From Euprymna scolopes (Eukaryota), in NCBI GenBank assembly GCA_053919585.1, contig CM132792.1: a stretch of DNA of 64,000 nt; one strand, given 5' to 3'. The translations under genes were made by a program, and so were the position numbers. The notes below the pieces were generated by a model. That model was not told the DNA's origin. It made no database searches and worked only from the letters and a program-made list of their open reading frames with translations. This document shows, one piece after another, positions 6,172 through 14,984 of the stretch (its first letter is position 1; every line of letters starts with the position of its first letter).

Positions 6172-9100
6172 AGATGTGGCATCCCCCAACAACGGATGTG
6201 GTGCCTCCCGGCCCCCCCGACACGGTCGCTACACCAGGAGCGTCCCCCATGGTGAAGAAGCAGAGGCCTGTTCCTGGTTGTTTTCATAACACTTCACGGT
6301 AAACAATATTCTTAGTATATGTTACACCATGCTTTCTGCCCTGATTATCATCTTTATGCTGTTACATTACCTTAAATTTCACACTGTGCTTAGATCGAGC
6401 TCTTGAACATGCCACATACAGTGTACCATGAGAAAATACAGGTTGTTGAACATATATACCAACCTTATCAAAAGTTTGGCCTTGTGCTTTATTGATGGTC
6501 AGTGAATATGCTAATCGTATTGAAAACTATCCGATGAAATGCAAACGGAACATTTGTATCACTTAGCTTTAACTTAATTCTTGGAATGATAACTGTGGAA
6601 CCTCTATTAGATCCATTAATTAAAATAGCAATGATGCTGTTTTGATGACATTCTTTTATTTTCATCCTAGTTCCATTACAAAGTCCTTGATTTATGGATA
6701 AATTTCACAGTAGCATTACTATTGCCCCTGTTTTCACATCAAGTCAGTGAGCATTCCAGACAGAGTTAATGAATTTATGAACTCGATAGGATAATTTTGA
6801 AGTTCAGCATCATCATTGGAGATGTAATCTGTACTTAAATATGTATTTATGCCTTCGGGAAGATTATTTAGAATTTCTTCATTTACTGTTAAACATTCTG
6901 TATTTTTGGAGTTATGATGATTCTATTTTCCATTTCTTGAGGGCTGCAATCAAATGTTTCTGAGATTAGAGAACCATTACATACCAAATCATCAGGAACA
7001 TCTATATCATCTACAGGAACGTCATTAAGACTGCTCATTAGTGTACTATTACCAAGATGAAGGAGCTATCTACAAAACTTGTGTTCATTTATGTTAGTTC
7101 TAACGTTTTGTGTTAGCTGTAATTGACTGAAATGATGCCCCAATGTGCAACTTTTAAGACAGGTGTCTATAATAGATGTAGGTGATCCATGTGGCACTAC
7201 TGGCAAAATTTGGCTGACGTCACCTCCAAGTATGAGAAATTTTCCACCAAATATTTTATCGTTACTCATATCTTGTAGACATCTATCTATAGCAAGCAGT
7301 GTATGATTAAGTATCATAAAAGCTTCGTCTATGATGAATACCTTTATCCTTCTCAAAAAAAGAAGCATGCTCTGATACAGGAGAAACGTTACAGACACTG
7401 GTTTCTGTCAGAGGTACAGGTAGTTTGAATATACTGTGGAGTGTTTTCTCTGAAGTTAGTAGCATAGCAGCAATGCCAGTCCATGCCGCAGTGGCGGTTA
7501 CAGTACTGCTGGAGGTGAAGTAATCATATAACATGTTGAATAACAAGGTTTTTCCTGATCCGGCTGGGGCATCTAAATAGAAGCAATTGTTGTTTTGGGC
7601 TTCTTTTTCAGTTGCCATGACAGCCTTGATGATAGTATTAAAGACCTCTAATTGTTCATTGTTTAGCAATTCAACATTAGACCGGTTTGTATTTCGAGTC
7701 ATATTATCTATTGAAGGATCACCTGTTGGTTCAGGTAAACTCATTGCCTGGCAAGAAGAACCATGCGCATTAAATATTGCTTTTATCAAATGAAGTGCAA
7801 TGTTTTCACATATACATTCATCATAAGCAGAAATGAGGTTTTCAATCATGCTCTGTTTATGGTTAATAAATAGTTGAAAGGCATCCACTGGATGATGATA
7901 GAGACAGCATTGCAAACATTCTACGTAGTTGTTGTGGCATTCTAAATGTAGCCGCTTCAGTAAGAACATTTTCTAATTCAGTATCATCTTGCAATAATCT
8001 AAGGCTGATGCAAGCTTCTCTAAATGTAGGGAATGTATGACTTTGGACTGTTCTCAAATCTTCAAATGACTTTGCTCCAAAGACATGAAGAAGCAGAATC
8101 CGTAGATAAAACTTTTCACCTTGGTTTGGTGAAACTGAATACATTCTTGTGATCAAATTACTTGACCGCTTTCTTTTAGTCCATTTTGTAGTAGTTTTGT
8201 TAAATACATAATGATGTGGAATATCACAGTAAAAATATTGGTTAGCAGTAATATCATTCTGATTTAGTTCAAACCAAGCAGTCAAATTTGTGTGACGTTG
8301 TGCTTGTTGAATTGCTTATTCAGCTTGATAATAAATCTGTTGCTATCCAGGCATGTGTACAGCTAAACAGTACACAACATGAGACTATCCATGCATTTTA
8401 TAGTCAGAAAGACGCCACATTGCTTCTGGAGGTGATACATATCTGCATGATAGATATTGCTTGACTTCATCTCTTTGTTCTGATCGCATTGTTTCTCCTT
8501 CATCGATATTAATAGATGAATCATGGTTATTAACCTCCATCATAGCACTATCATGTCCTTTATAAACATATTTAAATATGTATTTTATACTCTTGACTGA
8601 AGAGCAGATTTCTAAGTTAATATGAGCTCCAAAAAAAAAAAGATATTTTCTCAGAAGAAATTTGTTGAAAGGGACTATGTATCTATTATCAACAGTAAAA
8701 TTATCGACTTGAACTGAGTAACCATTATTTGCACGTTTGTAAGCCAGGTATCCATCAATGTTTTCTACTGTTTCTTCTCTAAATGCCTTTGGAAATTTCT
8801 TTTTGCATAATCCTTTACTCATACAAGGAGAATTAGTATTAACTGCACCACATGGGCCATGTAGCATTCAAGATTTAACTAAATCACGAAGCTCTGGATC
8901 TTCAGGTCCAGGTATTTCTGCTGACACAATTGCATCAATTTGTTGAACTGTTCTGATCTTATCCTGATCTCGCAGCATTATGATCATGTGGCAGTGTGGT
9001 AACCCTCTTTTGAAATTCAATAACATAAACATATGCAACAGGAGTTCCCAATACATGTCTGTCTTTAATGCCTTTCAAAAGTTCAGTTAGATGTGCATGA

Positions 9101-9761
9101 TACACACGTGATATTAAGTCAGGTCGATTTTGTGCAAGTTCTGATGACCCCAAGTTGTTTAATATTTTAGGACATCTTGGATTACATGTATAGGTAAGGA
9201 ATAGGTCTGCCTTTCCATATTTACAGAAAACTGCCATTGCATCTTGATACAGTTGTTGAAGATTCCTAGGACTTCCTGTAAATGAAGATGGTAGAATAAC
9301 TGGTACACCAGGATCGCCATCTTCATTCCTTGCTAAATGATCCATTAAGCCAGAATATTGAGCAGCTCTTAGTTGACTTTGATGGCTTTTAATGAAGTTC
9401 AATCTGCACCCTTCAACTTTCACATATGCATCAACGACATATTGTTGGAATAGTTTACCAGATCTATGGATAATACTGAATGAATCTCTAATTGCAAGGC
9501 GATAACTGTAATACTCTTGCATTGTCACTTTATTGCGAACTCTTGTTTGCTGTTCTGGCCTATGTTGTATGTTTATGTGCCAGCCTTGTTCACCATTTGG
9601 AAATAATATAGGATATATCATGGGGTCCAAGTGGCAAGACAGATAAGAAATTCGGTGTTTTGCACAGAAACTATTAGAGTAGAAAGCTTTCTGGCGGTTA
9701 GGGACCTCAACAGTGAAGGGGTGAGATTTTGTTGCTAAGCGGGTTTGTCGGGCATATGTAC

Positions 9762-9796
9762 CACAGTGGGCCCAGATGGCCAATGTTTGGAAATAG
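9762..9796 (+). repeat. Transib 3' TIR (outer, second family member)
   Basis: CACAGTGGGCCCAGA is a perfect 15-bp inverse of 13543-13557, followed by tggccaatgttt and GGAAATAG. Confidence 0.85.
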
Positions 9797-10242
9797 AGGT
9801 GAAGCATCATCACAAATGACTTTTATAAGATTTTTTTCAAAACTTTTGAGGCATATGATCAACTTGGGTTCATTTTAATTAGATTTTAACTGATATTTGT
9901 CTCTGAAAACAGTTCTGGGACCAAATTGACCTATTTTGGCTGTGTCACAAAATGTCGCGAATCTACCGAAATTTACTAAATTCAGAGAAATATTGAAATA
10001 GGCATTATTTCAGTTTGGATTGAGATAGGAAAGTGGTTGAGGGCTTGTTAGAAGCGTATGGCCAAGGAGAACATAATGGAAGCAATTCATGTTGAGCTAA
10101 TATACCAGTTTATGTATTGGCTTTTATAAAGTAATGAATCTGTCTGAAATTGTGTATTTCTGTTGAAAATTGCACAGGTAACAATACAAACATTATGTGT
10201 ATTATTGAATTTTCTCAAAACCTCACATAAAGATAATATAAA

Positions 10243-10320
10243 TTAATCAAGAAAAATGTCTTCAATAAGGCTTGCATACCAGTTCTTGGACAAGCCAAAC
10301 AACCGATTATGTGAACATAT
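10243..10320 (-). pseudogene. Diverged second copy of the Transib transposase C-terminus
   Basis: Minus-strand translation ICSHNRLFGLSKNWYASLIEDIFLD* versus IRSHGRLVGLPKRWYASLVEDIFLD* at the end of the main ORF. Confidence 0.85.
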
Positions 10321-10322
10321 GG

Positions 10323-10357
10323 CACACTGGCCCCAGATCGCCAAACTTTGGAAATAG
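10323..10357 (+). repeat. Transib 3' TIR (inner)
   Basis: cacactggccccagatcgccaaactttggaaatag aligns without gaps to the 9762 TIR. Confidence 0.75.
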
Positions 10358-10647
10358 AGATTAGGCGAAGTCTTACTTTGATTTTTCTGGCATTTTCTCG
10401 TTTTTTTTTGTTTTTCAGTTTTATACCCAAGTACAGAGTAACTAAAGCATATTTTGACTTAGAGAAAGTGTATAAAAGGATACAGGAACCAAAAATGCTT
10501 TGATTTTGTCTAAATTCACGAAATTAGGAGAAATTATAAAATTGGAGTAGTTTCGTTGACTCAACCGAGATAATTCAGTTTGTGTTATGTTTCTCATTCC
10601 ATACTGGCAGATAAGAATATAAAATAAAACAACAAATAAATCACCAT

Positions 10648-12798
10648 CTAGTCAAGAAAAATGTCTTCAACGAGGCTTGCATACCACCGCTTCGGTAGAC
10701 CTACCAACCGACCATGCGACCGAATGGTGTGATCGTCAGCTCCACATTCCGTGCAAAATTTTCTTGCCTGATCTGATCGTTCCAGTAACCTGGCCATTAC
10801 ATCAGTTAATTGGAGCAGTGGGTCAGTTTTCCTCGACAAGAACTGCAAGTAGTTGCGAATGTCTTTGTTGTTCGACTCTAAGCATTCCTCTGACAGACTT
10901 CCCAGTCCATGAGCATCATTTAGACTCATCAATTCTGTTGAATGATGAAGAGTCCCATGCAAGGTGTGATTCATCATGACCCATGGGAAGTTGTCACACA
11001 AATTGTATGAAGTCTGCTCACAAAGTTCTTTGAACTTCATCAGATCGATCTTACGTGACGACGACACAACCGATAGAACAGTGGAGAGCTGACGATGAAG
11101 GAGAAGCAGGTTTTCTCAGTGTTTTTCATCAACTAATTTTTCGATTGAAGCTAGAACTTCCTCTGAAAAGAAGCGACGGCCTTGTGGACCATTGGTTGAT
11201 GTCCCACCTTTTCCACCAGCAGAGTTGACTCTATCAAGATACAGGCCTGTCTCTGTGTAGATCGCTTTGAGAACTCGATCCTTCGCTCGACGGACAGGTT
11301 CACCACGAACGTCGGACCTCTCAATCCACTGTTGGTAGTCAGCATGGCACCGATACAAAACCTTCAGGAACCACATTGTTCCATTGATGTACGAATGAGT
11401 CACAGTGATGCTTGATTGGTCAGATGTTGTGAGTGGCTTCTTGGTTAATCCTTGACGAGTCTCAAAATCTCCTTGTTTTGCTTTGACTTTACCATTCTCA
11501 TCAACTAGTTCATTGTACAGCTCGAGAGAATTCTTTGCCGATCTGTTAATGGGAAAGCCCTCTGCAACCTTGGTTCTGTCAGTCCAATCAGCCTGTTTTG
11601 TTGTGCATAGGATGCAATCAGCCCCTCCCAACCCTGAAATGTCCCTTTTGAATTTCAGATCCTTCATTGAATCGTGTACTATGACATTCACATCATATCC
11701 TTGACCATCAGCAGTAACAAAAATTCCATCTGAAGCCAACTCTTGGCGTGCTTTGTCTGTAGTGGGAACGACCATATTAAGAAGATCTTCATCGGTCTCT
11801 TTCTCCCTGATCAAGAATAGTGGTCTTAATGTTCTACAGTTGTTTGGCGAGTGATTCTGCCACAGACAAAAAGAAGAACCGTCCTGGTAACGAGCAAGTA
11901 GTTTCAGTGGTGTAATGCCATACTGGAACATATTTTCAGTTGCGTCCAGCATACTTGTAGAGTTCCACACTACTTGTTGACCAGCATCGTCACATCCATC
12001 TTTAAACACCATTTCAAGGACACCATCTCTGCATTTATCTTTTATGATTTTCTTAGGGATCAAGGATATGATGGACTCGATCGTCATTTTCACTAGGTCC
12101 TTGTACTGCACCTGAACTCCACTGTCATCAAGAACTGGGGAGATACTGGGGCGGAGCTTTTTACGTCCCTCCAACAACTCATTGCTGGTTGGAAAATAGA
12201 TTCCCTTCGCAGCAAGTATGTGCCTCATCTTTCTCATTTGCTCCCTACTCAACGTTAATGAATGCATCAATGCAATCGCTTCATTGATCTCAAAGGAATG
12301 AATATCGTTCACATTGGACGAAAATATCTCATACCCAACTCGAGCTGTCTTCTTTTCCGATTGAATATTCACACGATGAATCATATATCCTAGCAACTGA
12401 GTGACTGAAAGCTCAGGACATTCCTTTGCAGCGTATTCTTCAATGTAGTCGAGCAGACCCTGTGTTCTTTCCTTCTGCATTCTCTCCCCTAAGTTGACAA
12501 AACTCTTCCTTTGCTTCTTTCCAACTTGTGGACAGTTCCCTTCCATTTCGATTTCTTCTTTCGATGCTTGAGCAAGGATTTCGGTGTTTGCTAGGCGTTT
12601 CTTTTTCAATCGTTTGAAATGGTTCCATGCATTCAAGAAGAAGCCACTGATTTCTTTGTTTTCGTGAAAACCATGAGTTTCTCTGAATTGGCGAAAGCAT
12701 TTGGCATATTCAGGTGGTTTGGTACGGCATAATGCAGCCTGACTAATGATGGCTTCGAAGACCTGATATTCTGTGGTGAGAACATTGTTGCCTGCCAT
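10648..12798 (-). pseudogene. Transib/RAG1-core-like DDE transposase, about 716 codons with one in-frame TGA at 11116-11118
   Basis: ORFs 11116-12798 and 10648-11067 are in frame (DEKH*ENLLLLHRQLSTVLSVVSSSRKID). Motifs KDGCDDAG, RPLFLIREKE, SMKDLKF, CILC, HSYIN, STNGPQGRRFF, HGTLHH and GSLSEECLESNNK match the order of the RAG1/Transib core (D600, E662, D708, C727/C730, H795, H937/H942, E962 in mouse RAG1 numbering). Confidence 0.9.
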
Positions 12799-13518
12799 CT
12801 GAATATGATAATTTCTTTTTTTTAAACTTCAGTTAACCCGATAATAACCTGTAATGAAGAAAAAAGCATAGACATTAACTGAATGGTCATATAGAATAAT
12901 AGAATACTCAAAATATTTGATAGAACATGTAAAAGCAAACTAAAACTTTGGCAAAATGCCCGAATTTGGTAATTTGGTCCCAGATCCCGGAAAAATGAAA
13001 ATTCTATTTGTCAGAAAAAAAATTTACTGCTAAGATTTACAAAACAAATTTGACATAGTTAGAAAGGTCTTAGGCTATATTTTTTGAAACATATATACTT
13101 TGATATGTAAATCTTAGCGGTTTTTGAGCTATTTGAGGAATTGAACAAAAAATAAATGACAATTTTGCTGAAACATTAAGGTAAAATTTCACTAAATAAG
13201 CTTTTATCTTATCAAAATTTCATCTATTATACCACAAACAAGACCTCTGTTAGAAAAAAAAGATGAATTTAGTTATACAAATTGAAAAAATAACATCAAA
13301 AAACCCATTATGGCATTTTATTTACAAATTCTGGCTTAGTTTATATGATAAGGTTCATATGTAGTCAAGAATATGATCTCGACACGATTTTGAATTTCCG
13401 CTAGGTTTGAGATAGCATAAAATCACTTCACGTGATGCTACAGACCTAATTTTTTTTTTTGTTTGTTCAGAAATTTTATTTACTTACAGAATTTCTATAG
13501 TTCAAGGTACATAAAGAA

Positions 13519-13557
13519 AGTTTTTTTTAGGCTATTTCCACCTCTGGGCCCACTGTG
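13519..13557 (-). repeat. Transib 5' TIR resembling a 23-RSS
   Basis: Minus strand reads CACAGTG ggcccagaggtggaaatagccta AAAAAAACT: exact heptamer, 23-nt spacer, 7/9 match to nonamer ACAAAAACC. Confidence 0.85.
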
Positions 13558-14984
13558 TTTTGGTTGAGAATGTGGGTAAACAATAATATCTCTGTTAGCA
13601 GATGGAGCACCATCCTCACCAACAAATACTACATCTATTTCGTTGTTTATTGGATTGTTAAATCTTTTGATATCTGGACCAGCGGTGAAATGCATCAAAA
13701 CTCTCCTTGGCTTTACATTTTCCCTTATAGCACGTGCTTCCTCTTCTAATTCAATGGCCCTCATATTTTTATAAGCTTGGGCATAAGGATTATTCTCCAT
13801 AACTGTAGCTATGGTTTCAAAGACACTTTAGATACATTTATTATTTTCTGGTAAATTACACCGGAGTTGATTTGCTTCAGATAAGTCCAAGATGTAAATC
13901 TGTCCATATTTTCTCTCTTTTTCATTATTTGGGTGCAGAGTACTGGAATAATGATAGGTTTGACCTTGTAAGCAAAAACAATAGGGGCCTCTTCCAGGAG
14001 GGCGGACATTATTTGCTCCAAATGATGCAAATGAAAGTGAATTGCGTATATTAGATCTGAAATTAAACGCTTCTTTGTCATTACCTTTGAGTAACCTTTG
14101 GAGTTGAGGATAATCTTGTAAGGGAGGAAGAGAAACTTTTCGTTTTTGACAACAATTCGATGCTTCTCCTCGAAATCTAAGTGCTCTACAAAATGAGCAA
14201 ATCAAACTCACGTCACCTACAAAATAATATGGGATATTTTGTCTTTCTGCTTCATTCATATTGTTTTTTCGTTCCCGTTGCCTAGTTCTTTCATTTTGCA
14301 GATAAAGTTGTCTGTCTTCAATCGTGTTATTTATTTGCTGTCTCAATATGTTTCTCCTTTGCAATCTGATATTATCCCTTTCTTCAGTTCGTAGCTGCTG
14401 ACGCCTTTGTCTTTGTCGTTCTCTTGTATCTTCCAATGTAGTGCTAGTGATTTGGTTCATTCTGTGTGAAAATTTAACTGGGCTTAATAAAAAAAAATTA
14501 TAAATAAAGATTTTGATACGAAAAATAAATGTTTCTATAAGGAAATAAAATTCAATATAAATGTTTTAAATGAGAATAAATATTTCTTAATGAAACCGTT
14601 TTTTATATTAAAAATCATTAGTGTGTAATTTTTCTAAGAGAGAATTTAAATCAATATTTTTATAATTTAGCTCTGTAAAAAGGATATCTAGGTGAATTAT
14701 ATAATAATAAATTATTTCCTCTCATAACATTTATTGGTGCTTCTACACTTTGTCGCCAAAAAAAAGGATGCCATGTTTTTCAGCGCACCTGCTGCCAGAA
14801 TCCAAGAATGACATTAGTATTTTAAACTGTAGAAACTATTTTATTTATTCAATAAATATATTGAAGTGAAAGTGTAGAAGAACCTATTTTTTGCTTTGAT
14901 TAAAGAACTGTACACGCTTTCCAGTTATTTCATGATTTCGTCTAAATCATGTTCAAGCTTGATTGAGTTCCTATGATCTTAATG

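What the first reader, a model, noticed from the sequence alone, without database searches (positions are those of the whole stretch)
13519..13557. Asymmetric RSS-like TIRs: a 23-RSS-like 5' end and a 9-bp spacing offset
Seen: the 5' end is CACAGTG + 23 nt + AAAAAAACT (7/9 to ACAAAAACC). All three TIRs share a second box, GGAAATAG, lying 11 nt after the heptamer at the 5' end but 20 nt after it in both 3' ends. Known: Transib TIRs resemble RSSs, and 12/23 spacers differ by about one helical turn. Inference: a bipartite, asymmetric end-pairing rule. The 3' ends have no convincing nonamer at 12 nt, and the A-run could be chance in AT-rich DNA.
Basis: partly seen in the sequence, partly recalled or inferred. 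Interest (0 to 1): 0.75.

Follow-up and report, generated by a model that had tools for sequence, protein, structure and literature searches.

The report
Asymmetric two-box ends of a Transib transposon
The two ends of this mollusc-type Transib (RAG1-like) jumping gene carry the same second recognition box at two distances from the cut site, one DNA turn apart; relatives with different boxes keep that offset, but the design was already described for Transib and RAG-like transposons.

Summary
On the minus strand the 5' end (13557 downward) reads CACAGTG, 11 nt, GGAAATAG, 3 nt, then an A-run. This fits heptamer + 23 nt + AAAAAAACT. The 3' end (9762 upward) reads CACAGTG, 20 nt, GGAAATAG, with no A-run. 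One correction: the third "TIR" at 10323 is an internal relic present in all fetched copies (at least 26) and never used as an end.

Genome-wide, the 15-nt terminus and the box occur only 3 nt apart (60 hits) or 12 nt apart (44 hits). Every convergent pair I could score by eye joins one of each. Most copies have 5-bp target duplications.

Relatives at 43-58% protein identity keep a 9-10 bp offset even where the box differs (AGACACTA, TGGTAAAACTC, TATTTCGT). One clade has the long spacer on the gene's 5' side. An A/T-tract about 23 nt from the heptamer marks 9 of 10 short-spacer ends.

So the bipartite asymmetric design is under constraint. A pairing rule is inferred, not shown. The design is published (Kapitonov and Jurka 2005; Tao 2019, 2022; Martin 2023), so this is a new member of a known kind. 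Earlier scan notes cover neighbouring features of this same element in my own window, not other DNA.

The parts
13519..13557 (-). This is the short-spacer end: heptamer, TR2-like block, box, A-tract.
   Evidence: One search gives the sequence. Similarity among at least 26 copies stops exactly at 13557. Contigs of three other runs break at 13557.
13551..13557 (-). Heptamer CACAGTG, the predicted cleavage site at the 5' end.
   Evidence: It is conserved in all families examined.
13543..13550 (-). Heptamer-adjacent block GGCCCAGA (TR2-like). It is identical at both ends.
   Evidence: The first 15 nt of the two ends are identical. The block is kept in relatives down to 43% protein identity.
13532..13539 (-). 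Second box GGAAATAG, 11 nt after the heptamer. With the preceding T it is a 9-mer, TGGAAATAG, 10 nt after the heptamer.
13521..13528 (-). A-tract: A8 in this copy, A9 in the family consensus. It starts at position 30 of the end, 22 nt after the heptamer.
   Evidence: Other runs show one more T at 13520. A run of at least 4 A or T starts at position 29-31 in 9 of 10 short-spacer ends, against a background of 0.10.
9762..9796 (+). True 3' terminal inverted repeat, read inward. This is the long-spacer end: heptamer 9762-9768, GGCCCAGA 9769-9776, 12-nt insert 9777-9788, box 9789-9796.
   Evidence: (similarity among copies stops at 9762), and (contigs of other runs start at 9762).
10323..10357 (+). 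Internal relic of a 3'-type end (CACACTG GCCCCAGA ... GGAAATAG). It differs at 2 of the first 15 nt. It is carried inside every copy and never used as an end.
9762..10322 (-). 3' tail derived from a related family (B-like). It includes a scrap of that family's transposase C-terminus at 10244-10322.
   Evidence: repeat D1; families L059, L067 and L068 align to this tail directly after their coding region.
10648..12798 (-). Transib (RAG1-like DDE) transposase. In this copy it is split into two ORFs (11116-12798 and 10648-11067) and lacks 30 nt at 10769.
   Evidence: Pfam RAG1 E 2.8e-9. PDB hits BbRAG1L and RAG1. Profile hit to HzTransib E 4e-52. Intact relatives are single ORFs of about 728 aa.
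13558..13562 (.). Target-site duplication copy TTTTG next to the 5' end.
   Evidence: The empty-site joint 9654->13555, with 8 ambiguous letters, appears in runs X6 and X4.
9658..9662 (.). Second copy of the TTTTG target-site duplication. It is separated from the 3' end by a 99-bp foreign filler (9663-9761).
   Evidence: One search shows the filler is a very abundant repeat (depth about 46,000 against about 70).

Best explanation
These are the two ends of a young, single-gene Transib DNA transposon (window 9762-13557, minus strand, 3796 bp, 5-bp target duplications). Its ends are built from the same modules in different registers.

Both ends start with the cleavage heptamer CACAGTG and an adjacent conserved block, GGCCCAGA. 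A second recognition box, (T)GGAAATAG, follows after 2-3 nt at the 5' end and after 11-12 nt at the 3' end. That difference is one helical turn. At the short-spacer end an A/T-tract fills the position that the box occupies at the long-spacer end, about 22-23 nt from the heptamer. This is why that end looks like a 23-RSS.

Most likely mechanism (inferred):
- A transposase dimer nicks at the heptamers as RAG and HzTransib do.
- The C-terminal CxxCxxxxHxxxxH knuckle clamps the heptamer-adjacent block, as the CTT* of amphioxus RAG1L does on TR2.
- The N-terminal basic motif plus three-helix NBD-like module reads the distal box.
- Because the boxes sit one turn apart, the productive synaptic complex contains one short and one long end. 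This would be a 12/23-like preference without RAG2.

Shown: the architecture, its strict bimodality, and its conservation with changing box sequences. Inferred: which protein part reads which DNA module, and that pairing is actually asymmetric.
For: Element limits:
- Similarity among at least 26 copies (96-100% identity) stops exactly at 13557 and 9762.
- By my count, 21-22 of 24 paired copies have perfect 5-bp target duplications.

Bimodal spacing:
- The pattern CACAGTGGGCCCAGA-N{0,30}-GGAAATAG has 104 genome hits and 0 control hits.
- The gap is only 3 nt (60 hits) or 12 nt (44 hits).
- About 31 convergent pairs lying within 5 kb, tallied by eye from the list, are all short/long.

Conservation:
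- Four families in this genome are 66-80% identical in coding DNA and very different just beyond the ends (my reading). All keep the 11/20 design.
- Metagenome relatives at 53-58% protein identity keep it too (L071, L072, L073, L082).

Changing box, constant offset:
- L077: box AGACACTA at 7/17, target duplication GAGCT.
- L078-80: box TGGTAAAACTC at 19/10.
- L083: box TATTTCGT at 23/14, target duplication CGGGT.
- Each has a shuffle frequency of at most 18 in 4000.

Polarity:
- The two families with the long spacer on the 5' side form one clade with SH-aLRT support 99.
- So one end of each type is kept even when the orientation to the gene flips.

A/T-tract:
- It starts at position 29-31 in 9 of 10 short-spacer ends and 1 of 12 long-spacer ends, against a background of 0.10.
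- In L078 it travels with the short end although that end is on the gene's 3' side.

Protein:
- Pfam RAG1, and a profile best hit to HzTransib.
- A conserved basic motif K-(K/R)-R-K-S-F followed by three helices. These superpose on mouse RAG1 residues 400-452 (the NBD) at rmsd 2.1 A, 23% identity, Z 4.5.
- A conserved C-terminal CxxCxxxxHxxxxH motif.

Precedent:
- ProtoRAG prefers its asymmetric 5'/3' ends (PMC8289069).
- AanRAGL has two elements with 4/13 spacers (PMC9435367).
- PflRAGL-A has heptamer, TR2, a spacer with 10-bp asymmetry, and a nonamer-like tract (bioRxiv 10.1101/2023.08.20.553239).
Against: - No biochemical data exist for this family.
- The short/long pairs within one family are inherited, so they are not independent tests of a pairing rule.
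- NBD homology is weak. The sequence profile gives E 1.1, Foldseek gives nothing, and the VIA match has Z 4.5, tied with unrelated rows.
- For invertebrate RAGL enzymes with a CTT* knuckle, the published view is that the terminal 15-17 bp dominate and asymmetry matters little (PMC7204232).
- Several metagenome contigs (L073, L078, L079) show no matching target duplications.
- The A-run varies in length (8-10) among copies, and L083 has no run of 4 or more at position 29-31.
Confidence: 0.7

Rival explanations
1. The asymmetry is tolerated but not required. The transposase needs only the terminal 15-17 bp (heptamer plus GGCCCAGA) and perhaps the box at any nearby distance. The 9-bp difference is a frozen indel with no pairing rule.
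For: - PMC7204232 argues that CTT*-bearing RAGL enzymes rely on the terminal 15-17 bp and are relatively insensitive to asymmetry.
- This family has a CTT-like knuckle and a 15-nt terminus identical at both ends.
- The pairs seen are inherited, not independent.
Against: - A 9-10 bp offset recurs in lineages whose boxes are unrelated in sequence, and after a swap of polarity.
- Only two spacing classes exist genome-wide.
- The sequence beyond the box diverges freely between families while the box and its spacing do not.
Confidence: 0.2
2. The ends are a literal 12/23 RSS pair. The 5' end is a 23-RSS with an A-rich nonamer, and the 3' end is a 12-RSS.
For: - The 5' end has a perfect consensus heptamer and a 7/9 nonamer at 23 nt.
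- It fits the published Transib consensus CACAATG-23-AAAAAAATC (PMC1131882).
- The A/T-tract position is conserved.
Against: - The 3' end has no A-rich nonamer at 12 nt (1/9 by my count) or at 23 nt.
- Only 1 of 12 long-spacer ends has an A/T run there.
- The element shared by both ends is the GGAAATAG box. By that box the 5' end is the short partner.
Confidence: 0.05
3. The A-run at the 5' end is not part of end recognition. It is a slippage-prone homopolymer in AT-rich subterminal DNA, or an element of transposase expression.
For: - Its length varies from 8 to 10 among near-identical copies and from 4 to 9 among families.
- Subterminal DNA is 66-71% AT.
- L083 has no run of 4 or more at position 29-31.
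Against: - A run starts at position 29-31 in 9 of 10 short-spacer ends, against 0.10 expected.
- It is almost absent from long-spacer ends.
- In L078 it stays with the short-spacer end on the gene's 3' side. That argues against a promoter role.
Confidence: 0.25

Closest known systems
Transib terminal inverted repeats (Kapitonov and Jurka 2005, PMC1131882)
   Same: - CAC-heptamer ends and 5-bp target duplications.
- A consensus of heptamer + 23 nt + A-rich nonamer (AAAAAAATC), which the 5' end here matches.
- Some published families (Transib5, Transib2_AG, TransibN1-3_AG) have a 5' end like RSS12 and a 3' end like RSS23. By the shared box, the polarity here is the same.
   Different: - Here the element shared by both ends is a G-rich box (GGAAATAG), not the A-rich nonamer.
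- The A-tract is confined to the short-spacer end.
- The spacers to the box are 11/20 rather than 12/23.
- The heptamer-adjacent 8 nt are strongly conserved.
Subgroup I Transibs and AanRAGL (Tao et al. 2022, PMC9435367)
   Same: - Two conserved elements separated by spacers of unequal length. AanRAGL has 4/13, the same 9-bp difference.
- Subgroup I Transibs are all reported with asymmetric ends, a CTT1 knuckle and an NBD-equivalent.
- The family here has a C-terminal CCHH knuckle, an NBD-like segment, and about 55 residues that HzTransib lacks.
   Different: - Membership of Subgroup I was not established. The family profile scores HzTransib (Subgroup II) above BbRAG1L.
- The word 'mollus' does not occur in that paper's main text. 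Its supplementary species table was not checked.
- The sequences of the boxes differ.
PflRAGL-A ends (Martin et al. 2023, bioRxiv 10.1101/2023.08.20.553239)
   Same: The organisation is heptamer, conserved adjacent block (TR2), a spacer with 10-bp asymmetry, and a distal element. It is paired with a protein carrying both an NBD and a CTT zinc knuckle.
   Different: - PflRAGL-A carries RAG2L, and its NBD has GRPR/K. Here there is no RAG2L, and the basic motif is K-(K/R)-R-K with no GRP.
- The distal element in PflRAGL-A is AT-rich at both ends.
ProtoRAG ends (Tao et al. 2019, PMC8289069)
   Same: Bipartite conserved elements (TR1 and TR5) with a spacer of fixed length. An experimentally shown preference for the asymmetric 5'/3' pair.
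   Different: The spacers are 27/31 (a 4-bp difference). RAG2L is required. The distal element is unrelated.
Vertebrate 12/23 recombination signal sequences
   Same: The heptamer is identical (CACAGTG). The signal is bipartite, with about one helical turn of difference between partners. The 5' end formally scores as a 23-RSS (7/9 nonamer).
   Different: - There is no A-rich nonamer at the partner end.
- The offset is 9 bp rather than 11.
- The spacer next to the heptamer is conserved.
- The ends belong to a mobile element in a genome that the earlier scan note (s1-254969) and the mollusc-metagenome labels of two RNA runs describe as mollusc-type.

Membership tests
Transib superfamily | RAG1-like DDE transposase | tested here: met
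   - Pfam RAG1 PF12940, E 2.8e-9.
- A profile of 25 relatives hits HzTransib 6pqn at E 4e-52, BbRAG1L at 2.6e-34 and RAG1 at about 1e-22.
- Invariant acidic residues lie in the conserved motifs KDGxDxAG, DSMKDLK and SEExLExNNK.
Transib superfamily | 5-bp target-site duplications | tested here: met
   - By my count, 21-22 of 24 paired copies have perfect 5-bp duplications.
- Several diverged families do too, as do L077 and L083.
- The window copy has TTTTG on both sides, displaced by a 99-bp filler.
Transib superfamily | Ends starting with a CAC heptamer resembling the RSS heptamer | tested here: met
   CACAGTG is at both ends in nearly all families examined.
Transib superfamily | Single gene, no RAG2-like partner | tested here: met
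   - ORFs of at least 80 aa inside 9762-13557 are the split transposase plus two shorter ORFs nested within its coding region.
- L078 has one ORF of at least 90 aa in 5.9 kb.
Subgroup I Transib (Tao 2022) | A pair of asymmetric ends with two conserved elements | tested here: met
Subgroup I Transib (Tao 2022) | CTT1 (CTT*) zinc-knuckle tail | tested here: inconclusive
   A conserved CxxCxxxxHTxRSH motif is at the C-terminus (C694, C697, H702 nearly invariant). The last ligand is H rather than the C of CCGHC. It was not compared directly with CTT1 sequences.
Subgroup I Transib (Tao 2022) | Alpha11-alpha12 region of the zinc-binding domain retained | tested here: inconclusive
   Profile positions 414-469 have no counterpart in HzTransib. 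They lie within the stretch that aligns with BbRAG1L. No structural check was made.
Subgroup I Transib (Tao 2022) | Closer to RAG1L than Subgroup II Transibs are | tested here: inconclusive
   The single ORF hits BbRAG1L best, and HzTransib is not among its hits at E up to 0.01. The family profile scores HzTransib higher. No joint phylogeny with reference Transibs was possible.
12/23 RSS pair | A-rich nonamer 12+/-1 nt from one heptamer and 23+/-1 nt from the other | tested here: not met
   The 5' end has a 7/9 nonamer at 23 nt. The 3' end scores 1/9 at 12 nt (my count) and has no A-tract at 23 nt.
RAGL transposon | Convergent RAG1L and RAG2L genes between the ends | tested here: not met
   There is no second large ORF outside the transposase coding region.
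RAG1-type nonamer-binding domain | GRPR/K minor-groove motif followed by a three-helix dimerising module | tested here: inconclusive
   - Three helices at residues 103-163 follow a basic K-(K/R)-R-K-S-F motif.
- They superpose on mouse RAG1 residues 400-452 at rmsd 2.1 A, 23% identity, Z 4.5.
- There is no GRP. The sequence profile is not significant (E 1.1), and Foldseek finds nothing.

The most novel reading that the evidence does not exclude
The short-spacer end is a dual-register signal. It carries the shared box at the '12' position and an A/T-tract at the '23' position. The transposase has three DNA-reading modules: a winged-helix-like N-terminus, an NBD-like three-helix module, and a C-terminal knuckle. 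On this reading, a RAG2-less Transib already enforces a one-turn asymmetric pairing rule by a mechanism distinct from nonamer reading. The family would then be a tractable, probably still active model for how the 12/23 rule arose.
Probability: 0.2. Interest if true: 0.6.

Novelty: new member of a known kind. Interest (0 to 1): 0.35.

Why it matters
The origin of the 12/23 rule is debated. One view derives it from RAGL-A ends. The other is the 'Transib seed' idea.

This family adds a clean natural data set:
- A young family of at least 26 near-identical copies, nearly all with intact 5-bp target duplications.
- Presence in runs labelled as several organisms.
- Many diverged relatives in marine metagenomes.
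- A one-turn offset between two copies of a box that is kept while the box sequence and even the polarity change.

The family has many copies whose ends are intact, and intact 725-745 aa relatives exist, so a pairing rule without RAG2 could be tested directly. As a genomic finding it is a well-documented example of a published design, not a new principle.

Tried and rejected
- I treated the 10323 sequence as a third functional end and rejected this. All fetched copies carry it internally, and none ends there.
- I looked for spacings other than 3 and 12 nt between terminus and box. There are none within a 0-30 nt gap.
- I tried to fetch about 30 solo ends to look for short/short or long/long elements. 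I did not try another route.
- A full-text search for the 12-nt terminus string found only an unrelated aptamer paper.
- The N-terminal profile against PDB was not significant for RAG1. Foldseek on the N-terminal model gave no match. Only the wide VIA search placed RAG1 NBD residues 400-452 on model residues 107-160, at modest Z.
- No ends were found in contigs L070, L076, L081 and L084, and no 3' end in L074-L075. These contigs probably stop short of the ends.
- The krill record gave no DNA.
- Raw polyA RNA reads (X21) barely cover the element, so no transcription start could be placed relative to the A-tract.
- The other five GGAAATAG matches in the window are unrelated background.

Full report
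**Observation.**
On the minus strand the end at 13557 reads, going inward:
- CACAGTG (13551-13557)
- GGCCCAGAGGT (11 nt)
- GGAAATAG (13532-13539)
- CCT
- eight A (13521-13528)
- CT

This can also be parsed as heptamer + 23 nt + AAAAAAACT (13519-13527), which is 7/9 to the RSS nonamer.

At 9762 (plus strand, reading inward) CACAGTG is followed by 20 nt and GGAAATAG (9789-9796). At 10323 CACACTG is followed by 20 nt and GGAAATAG (10350-10357). A 12-nt spacer at these ends gives no A-rich nonamer.

The heptamer alone is at chance level in the window. The shared second word at an offset of 8-11 is not: it appeared in 3 of 4000 shuffles for the window pair.

**What the element is.**
The ORFs between the ends encode a RAG1-like DDE transposase:
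- Pfam RAG1, E 2.8e-9.
- PDB hits to BbRAG1L and RAG1.
- A profile of 25 relatives hits HzTransib at 4e-52.

The window's genome (5.9 Gb) holds at least 26 copies at 96-100% identity. Similarity between copies stops exactly at 13557 and exactly at 9762. So the mobile unit is 9762-13557 (3796 bp).

The 10323 'TIR' is internal to every copy. It differs from the functional ends at 2 of the first 15 nt. The terminal 561 bp (9762-10322) are the 3' tail of a related family, including a scrap of that family's coding C-terminus. The family is therefore a composite that now uses a relative's 3' end. This agrees with an earlier scan note on this window.

By my count, 21-22 of 24 paired copies have perfect 5-bp target duplications. 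The window copy has TTTTG on both sides, but a 99-bp foreign filler separates it from the 3' end. Contigs of two other runs show the empty Helitron site.

**Is the asymmetry constrained?**
Genome-wide, the 15-nt terminus followed within 0-30 nt by GGAAATAG has 104 hits and no control hits. The gap is 3 nt in 60 hits and 12 nt in 44 hits, and never anything else. Tallying the list by eye, about 31 convergent pairs lie within 5 kb, and all join one short and one long end.

Four families in this genome keep the same 11/20 design with 5-bp duplications. They are 66-80% identical in coding DNA, and by my reading their sequences are very different immediately beyond the ends.

Sixty-eight protein relatives were found, mostly single ORFs of 700-750 aa on marine-metagenome contigs. 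Contigs that contain ends show the following:

| Locus | Protein identity | Box | Spacer 5' / 3' | Note |
|---|---|---|---|---|
| L071 | 56% | GGAAATAG | 11 / 20 | |
| L073 | 53% | GGAAATAG (3' end GGAAATAT) | 11 / 20 | |
| L072 | 58% | GGAAATAG | - / 20 | 3' end only |
| L082 | 48% | GGAAATAA | - / 20 | 3' end only |
| L074 | 45% | GGAAATAG | 11 / - | 5' end only |
| L077 | 46% | AGACACTA | 7 / 17 | duplication GAGCT |
| L078-80 | 43% | TGGTAAAACTC | 19 / 10 | long spacer on gene's 5' side |
| L083 | 45% | TATTTCGT | 23 / 14 | duplication CGGGT; long spacer on gene's 5' side |

The offset stays at 9-10 bp while the box is replaced. Each such match is rare in shuffles (0 to 18 of 4000).

In a quick maximum-likelihood tree, the two families with the long spacer on the gene's 5' side form one clade (support 99). 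The GGAAATAG/short-5' state occurs in two distant clades. One end of each type is thus retained through box turnover and a flip of polarity. That is what a requirement for one short and one long end predicts.

**The A-run.**
Its length varies (8-10) among copies, and the family consensus is A9. Its position is conserved. A run of at least four A or T starts at position 29-31 in 9 of 10 short-spacer ends. The per-window background is 0.10, and only 1 of 12 long-spacer ends has such a run.

In L078 the tract goes with the short-spacer end even though that end lies on the gene's 3' side. This argues against a promoter role.

At the long-spacer end the box itself occupies positions 27-35. Both ends therefore have about 35-38 conserved bp, arranged as heptamer-block-box-A/T-tract or as heptamer-block-insert-box. 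The insert is partly conserved. Together with the start of the box it often forms a CCAAA(N)TTTGG palindrome (my reading).

**The protein side.**
Relatives share these features:
- A conserved basic motif, K-(K/R)-R-K-S-F, followed by three helices.
- A conserved C-terminal CxxCxxxxHxxxxH knuckle.
- About 55 residues that have no counterpart in HzTransib.

The N-terminal model is confident (pLDDT 88.7). Its helices at residues 107-160 superpose on mouse RAG1 residues 400-452, the nonamer-binding domain, at rmsd 2.1 A and 23% identity. The Z of 4.5 is tied with unrelated rows. The sequence profile (E 1.1) and Foldseek do not confirm this match. Residues 1-85 resemble winged-helix domains at Z 5-6. 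So an NBD-like reader of the distal box is plausible but not established.

**Comparison with what is known.**
- Kapitonov and Jurka (PMC1131882) gave the Transib consensus end as CACAATG + 23 + AAAAAAATC. They noted families whose 5' and 3' ends resemble RSS12 and RSS23.
- Tao et al. showed that ProtoRAG needs bipartite ends and prefers its asymmetric ends (PMC8289069).
- Tao et al. also reported that Subgroup I Transibs all have asymmetric ends, with AanRAGL spacers of 4/13 (PMC9435367).
- Martin et al. described heptamer-TR2-asymmetric spacer-nonamer ends in PflRAGL-A (bioRxiv 10.1101/2023.08.20.553239).
- Yakovenko et al. reviewed 12/23-like Transib ends (PMC8355894).

The present family fits this framework. 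By the shared box its 5' end is the short (12-like) partner. The 23-RSS likeness of the same end comes from the extra A-tract. It is not a literal 12/23 RSS pair, because the partner end has no A-rich nonamer.

**Mechanism and rivals.**
The most likely mechanism is as follows. The heptamer is nicked. The C-terminal knuckle clamps the adjacent block, as CTT* does on TR2. The N-terminal module reads the box. The one-turn offset favours a complex with one short and one long end.

The main rival is that the asymmetry is tolerated but not required, as proposed for CTT*-bearing RAGL enzymes (PMC7204232). The repeated retention of a 9-10 bp offset argues against this, but only an assay can decide.

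**Limits.**
- Solo ends could not be inspected.
- Several metagenome contigs lack matching duplications.
- RNA reads gave no transcription start.
- Subgroup placement was not resolved.

Noticed in passing
window 10323-10357: An internal 3'-type end with the correct box and spacing but two changes in the first 15 nt (CACACTG, GCCCCAGA). It is never used as an end in at least 26 copies. It acts as a natural 'mutant' suggesting these positions matter, or it records how the composite arose by read-through to the next 3'-type end.
   Followed up: partly
window 10769 and 11067-11116: Other runs carry 30 extra nt after 10769 that the window copy lacks. The window's transposase is also split into two ORFs, whereas relatives are single ORFs of about 728 aa. 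This copy is damaged.
   Followed up: partly
window 9663-9761: The 99-bp filler between the 3' end and the target duplication is an extremely abundant repeat. Its contig word depth is about 46,000, against about 70 for the element, in the same run.
   Followed up: no
window 9762-13557 (whole element): The element is held at 0.86-0.92 of sampled words in runs labelled as six different organisms (A-F) and in mollusc and invertebrate metatranscriptome runs. The holders could be close congeners, or the element could have spread horizontally. Relatives at 43-88% protein identity are common in marine (including Tara) metagenome contigs, and one is in krill.
   Followed up: no
P0001 residues 1-85 (equivalent to the N-terminus of the ORF at window 12544-12798, minus strand): The confident model of the N-terminal 85 residues resembles winged-helix DNA-binding domains (histone H5 globular domain, E2F, ORC; Z 5-6). 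This may be an extra DNA reader upstream of the NBD-like helices.
   Followed up: no
window 9777-9790 and the long-spacer ends of L058, L071, L072: The 3'-specific insert is not free sequence. Together with the start of the box it forms a CCAAA(N)TTTGG palindrome, perfect in several families. TGGCCA or TCGCGA palindromes lie just before it.
   Followed up: no
window 13545-13552 and 9767-9774: Positions 6-13 of both ends form a perfect 8-nt palindrome, TGGGCCCA, spanning the heptamer/TR2 boundary.
   Followed up: no
L083 335-4770: This family's box ((C/T)TATTTCG) is close to the reverse complement of GGAAATAG (CTATTTCC). The box may be read in the opposite orientation in the clade whose polarity is swapped.
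   Followed up: no
window 8385-9657 and 13558-14460: The Transib sits inside a Helitron Rep/helicase reading frame (Pfam Helitron_like_N, E 2.4e-47). Other Helitron copies in other runs show the uninterrupted site.
   Followed up: partly
L003 (G000:C5:132159797): Another copy shares with the window copy the A8 run, the CAAAA duplication and about 10 nt of similar 5' flank. Its 3' flank is different and it has no filler. This could reflect a target preference or a related insertion history.
   Followed up: no
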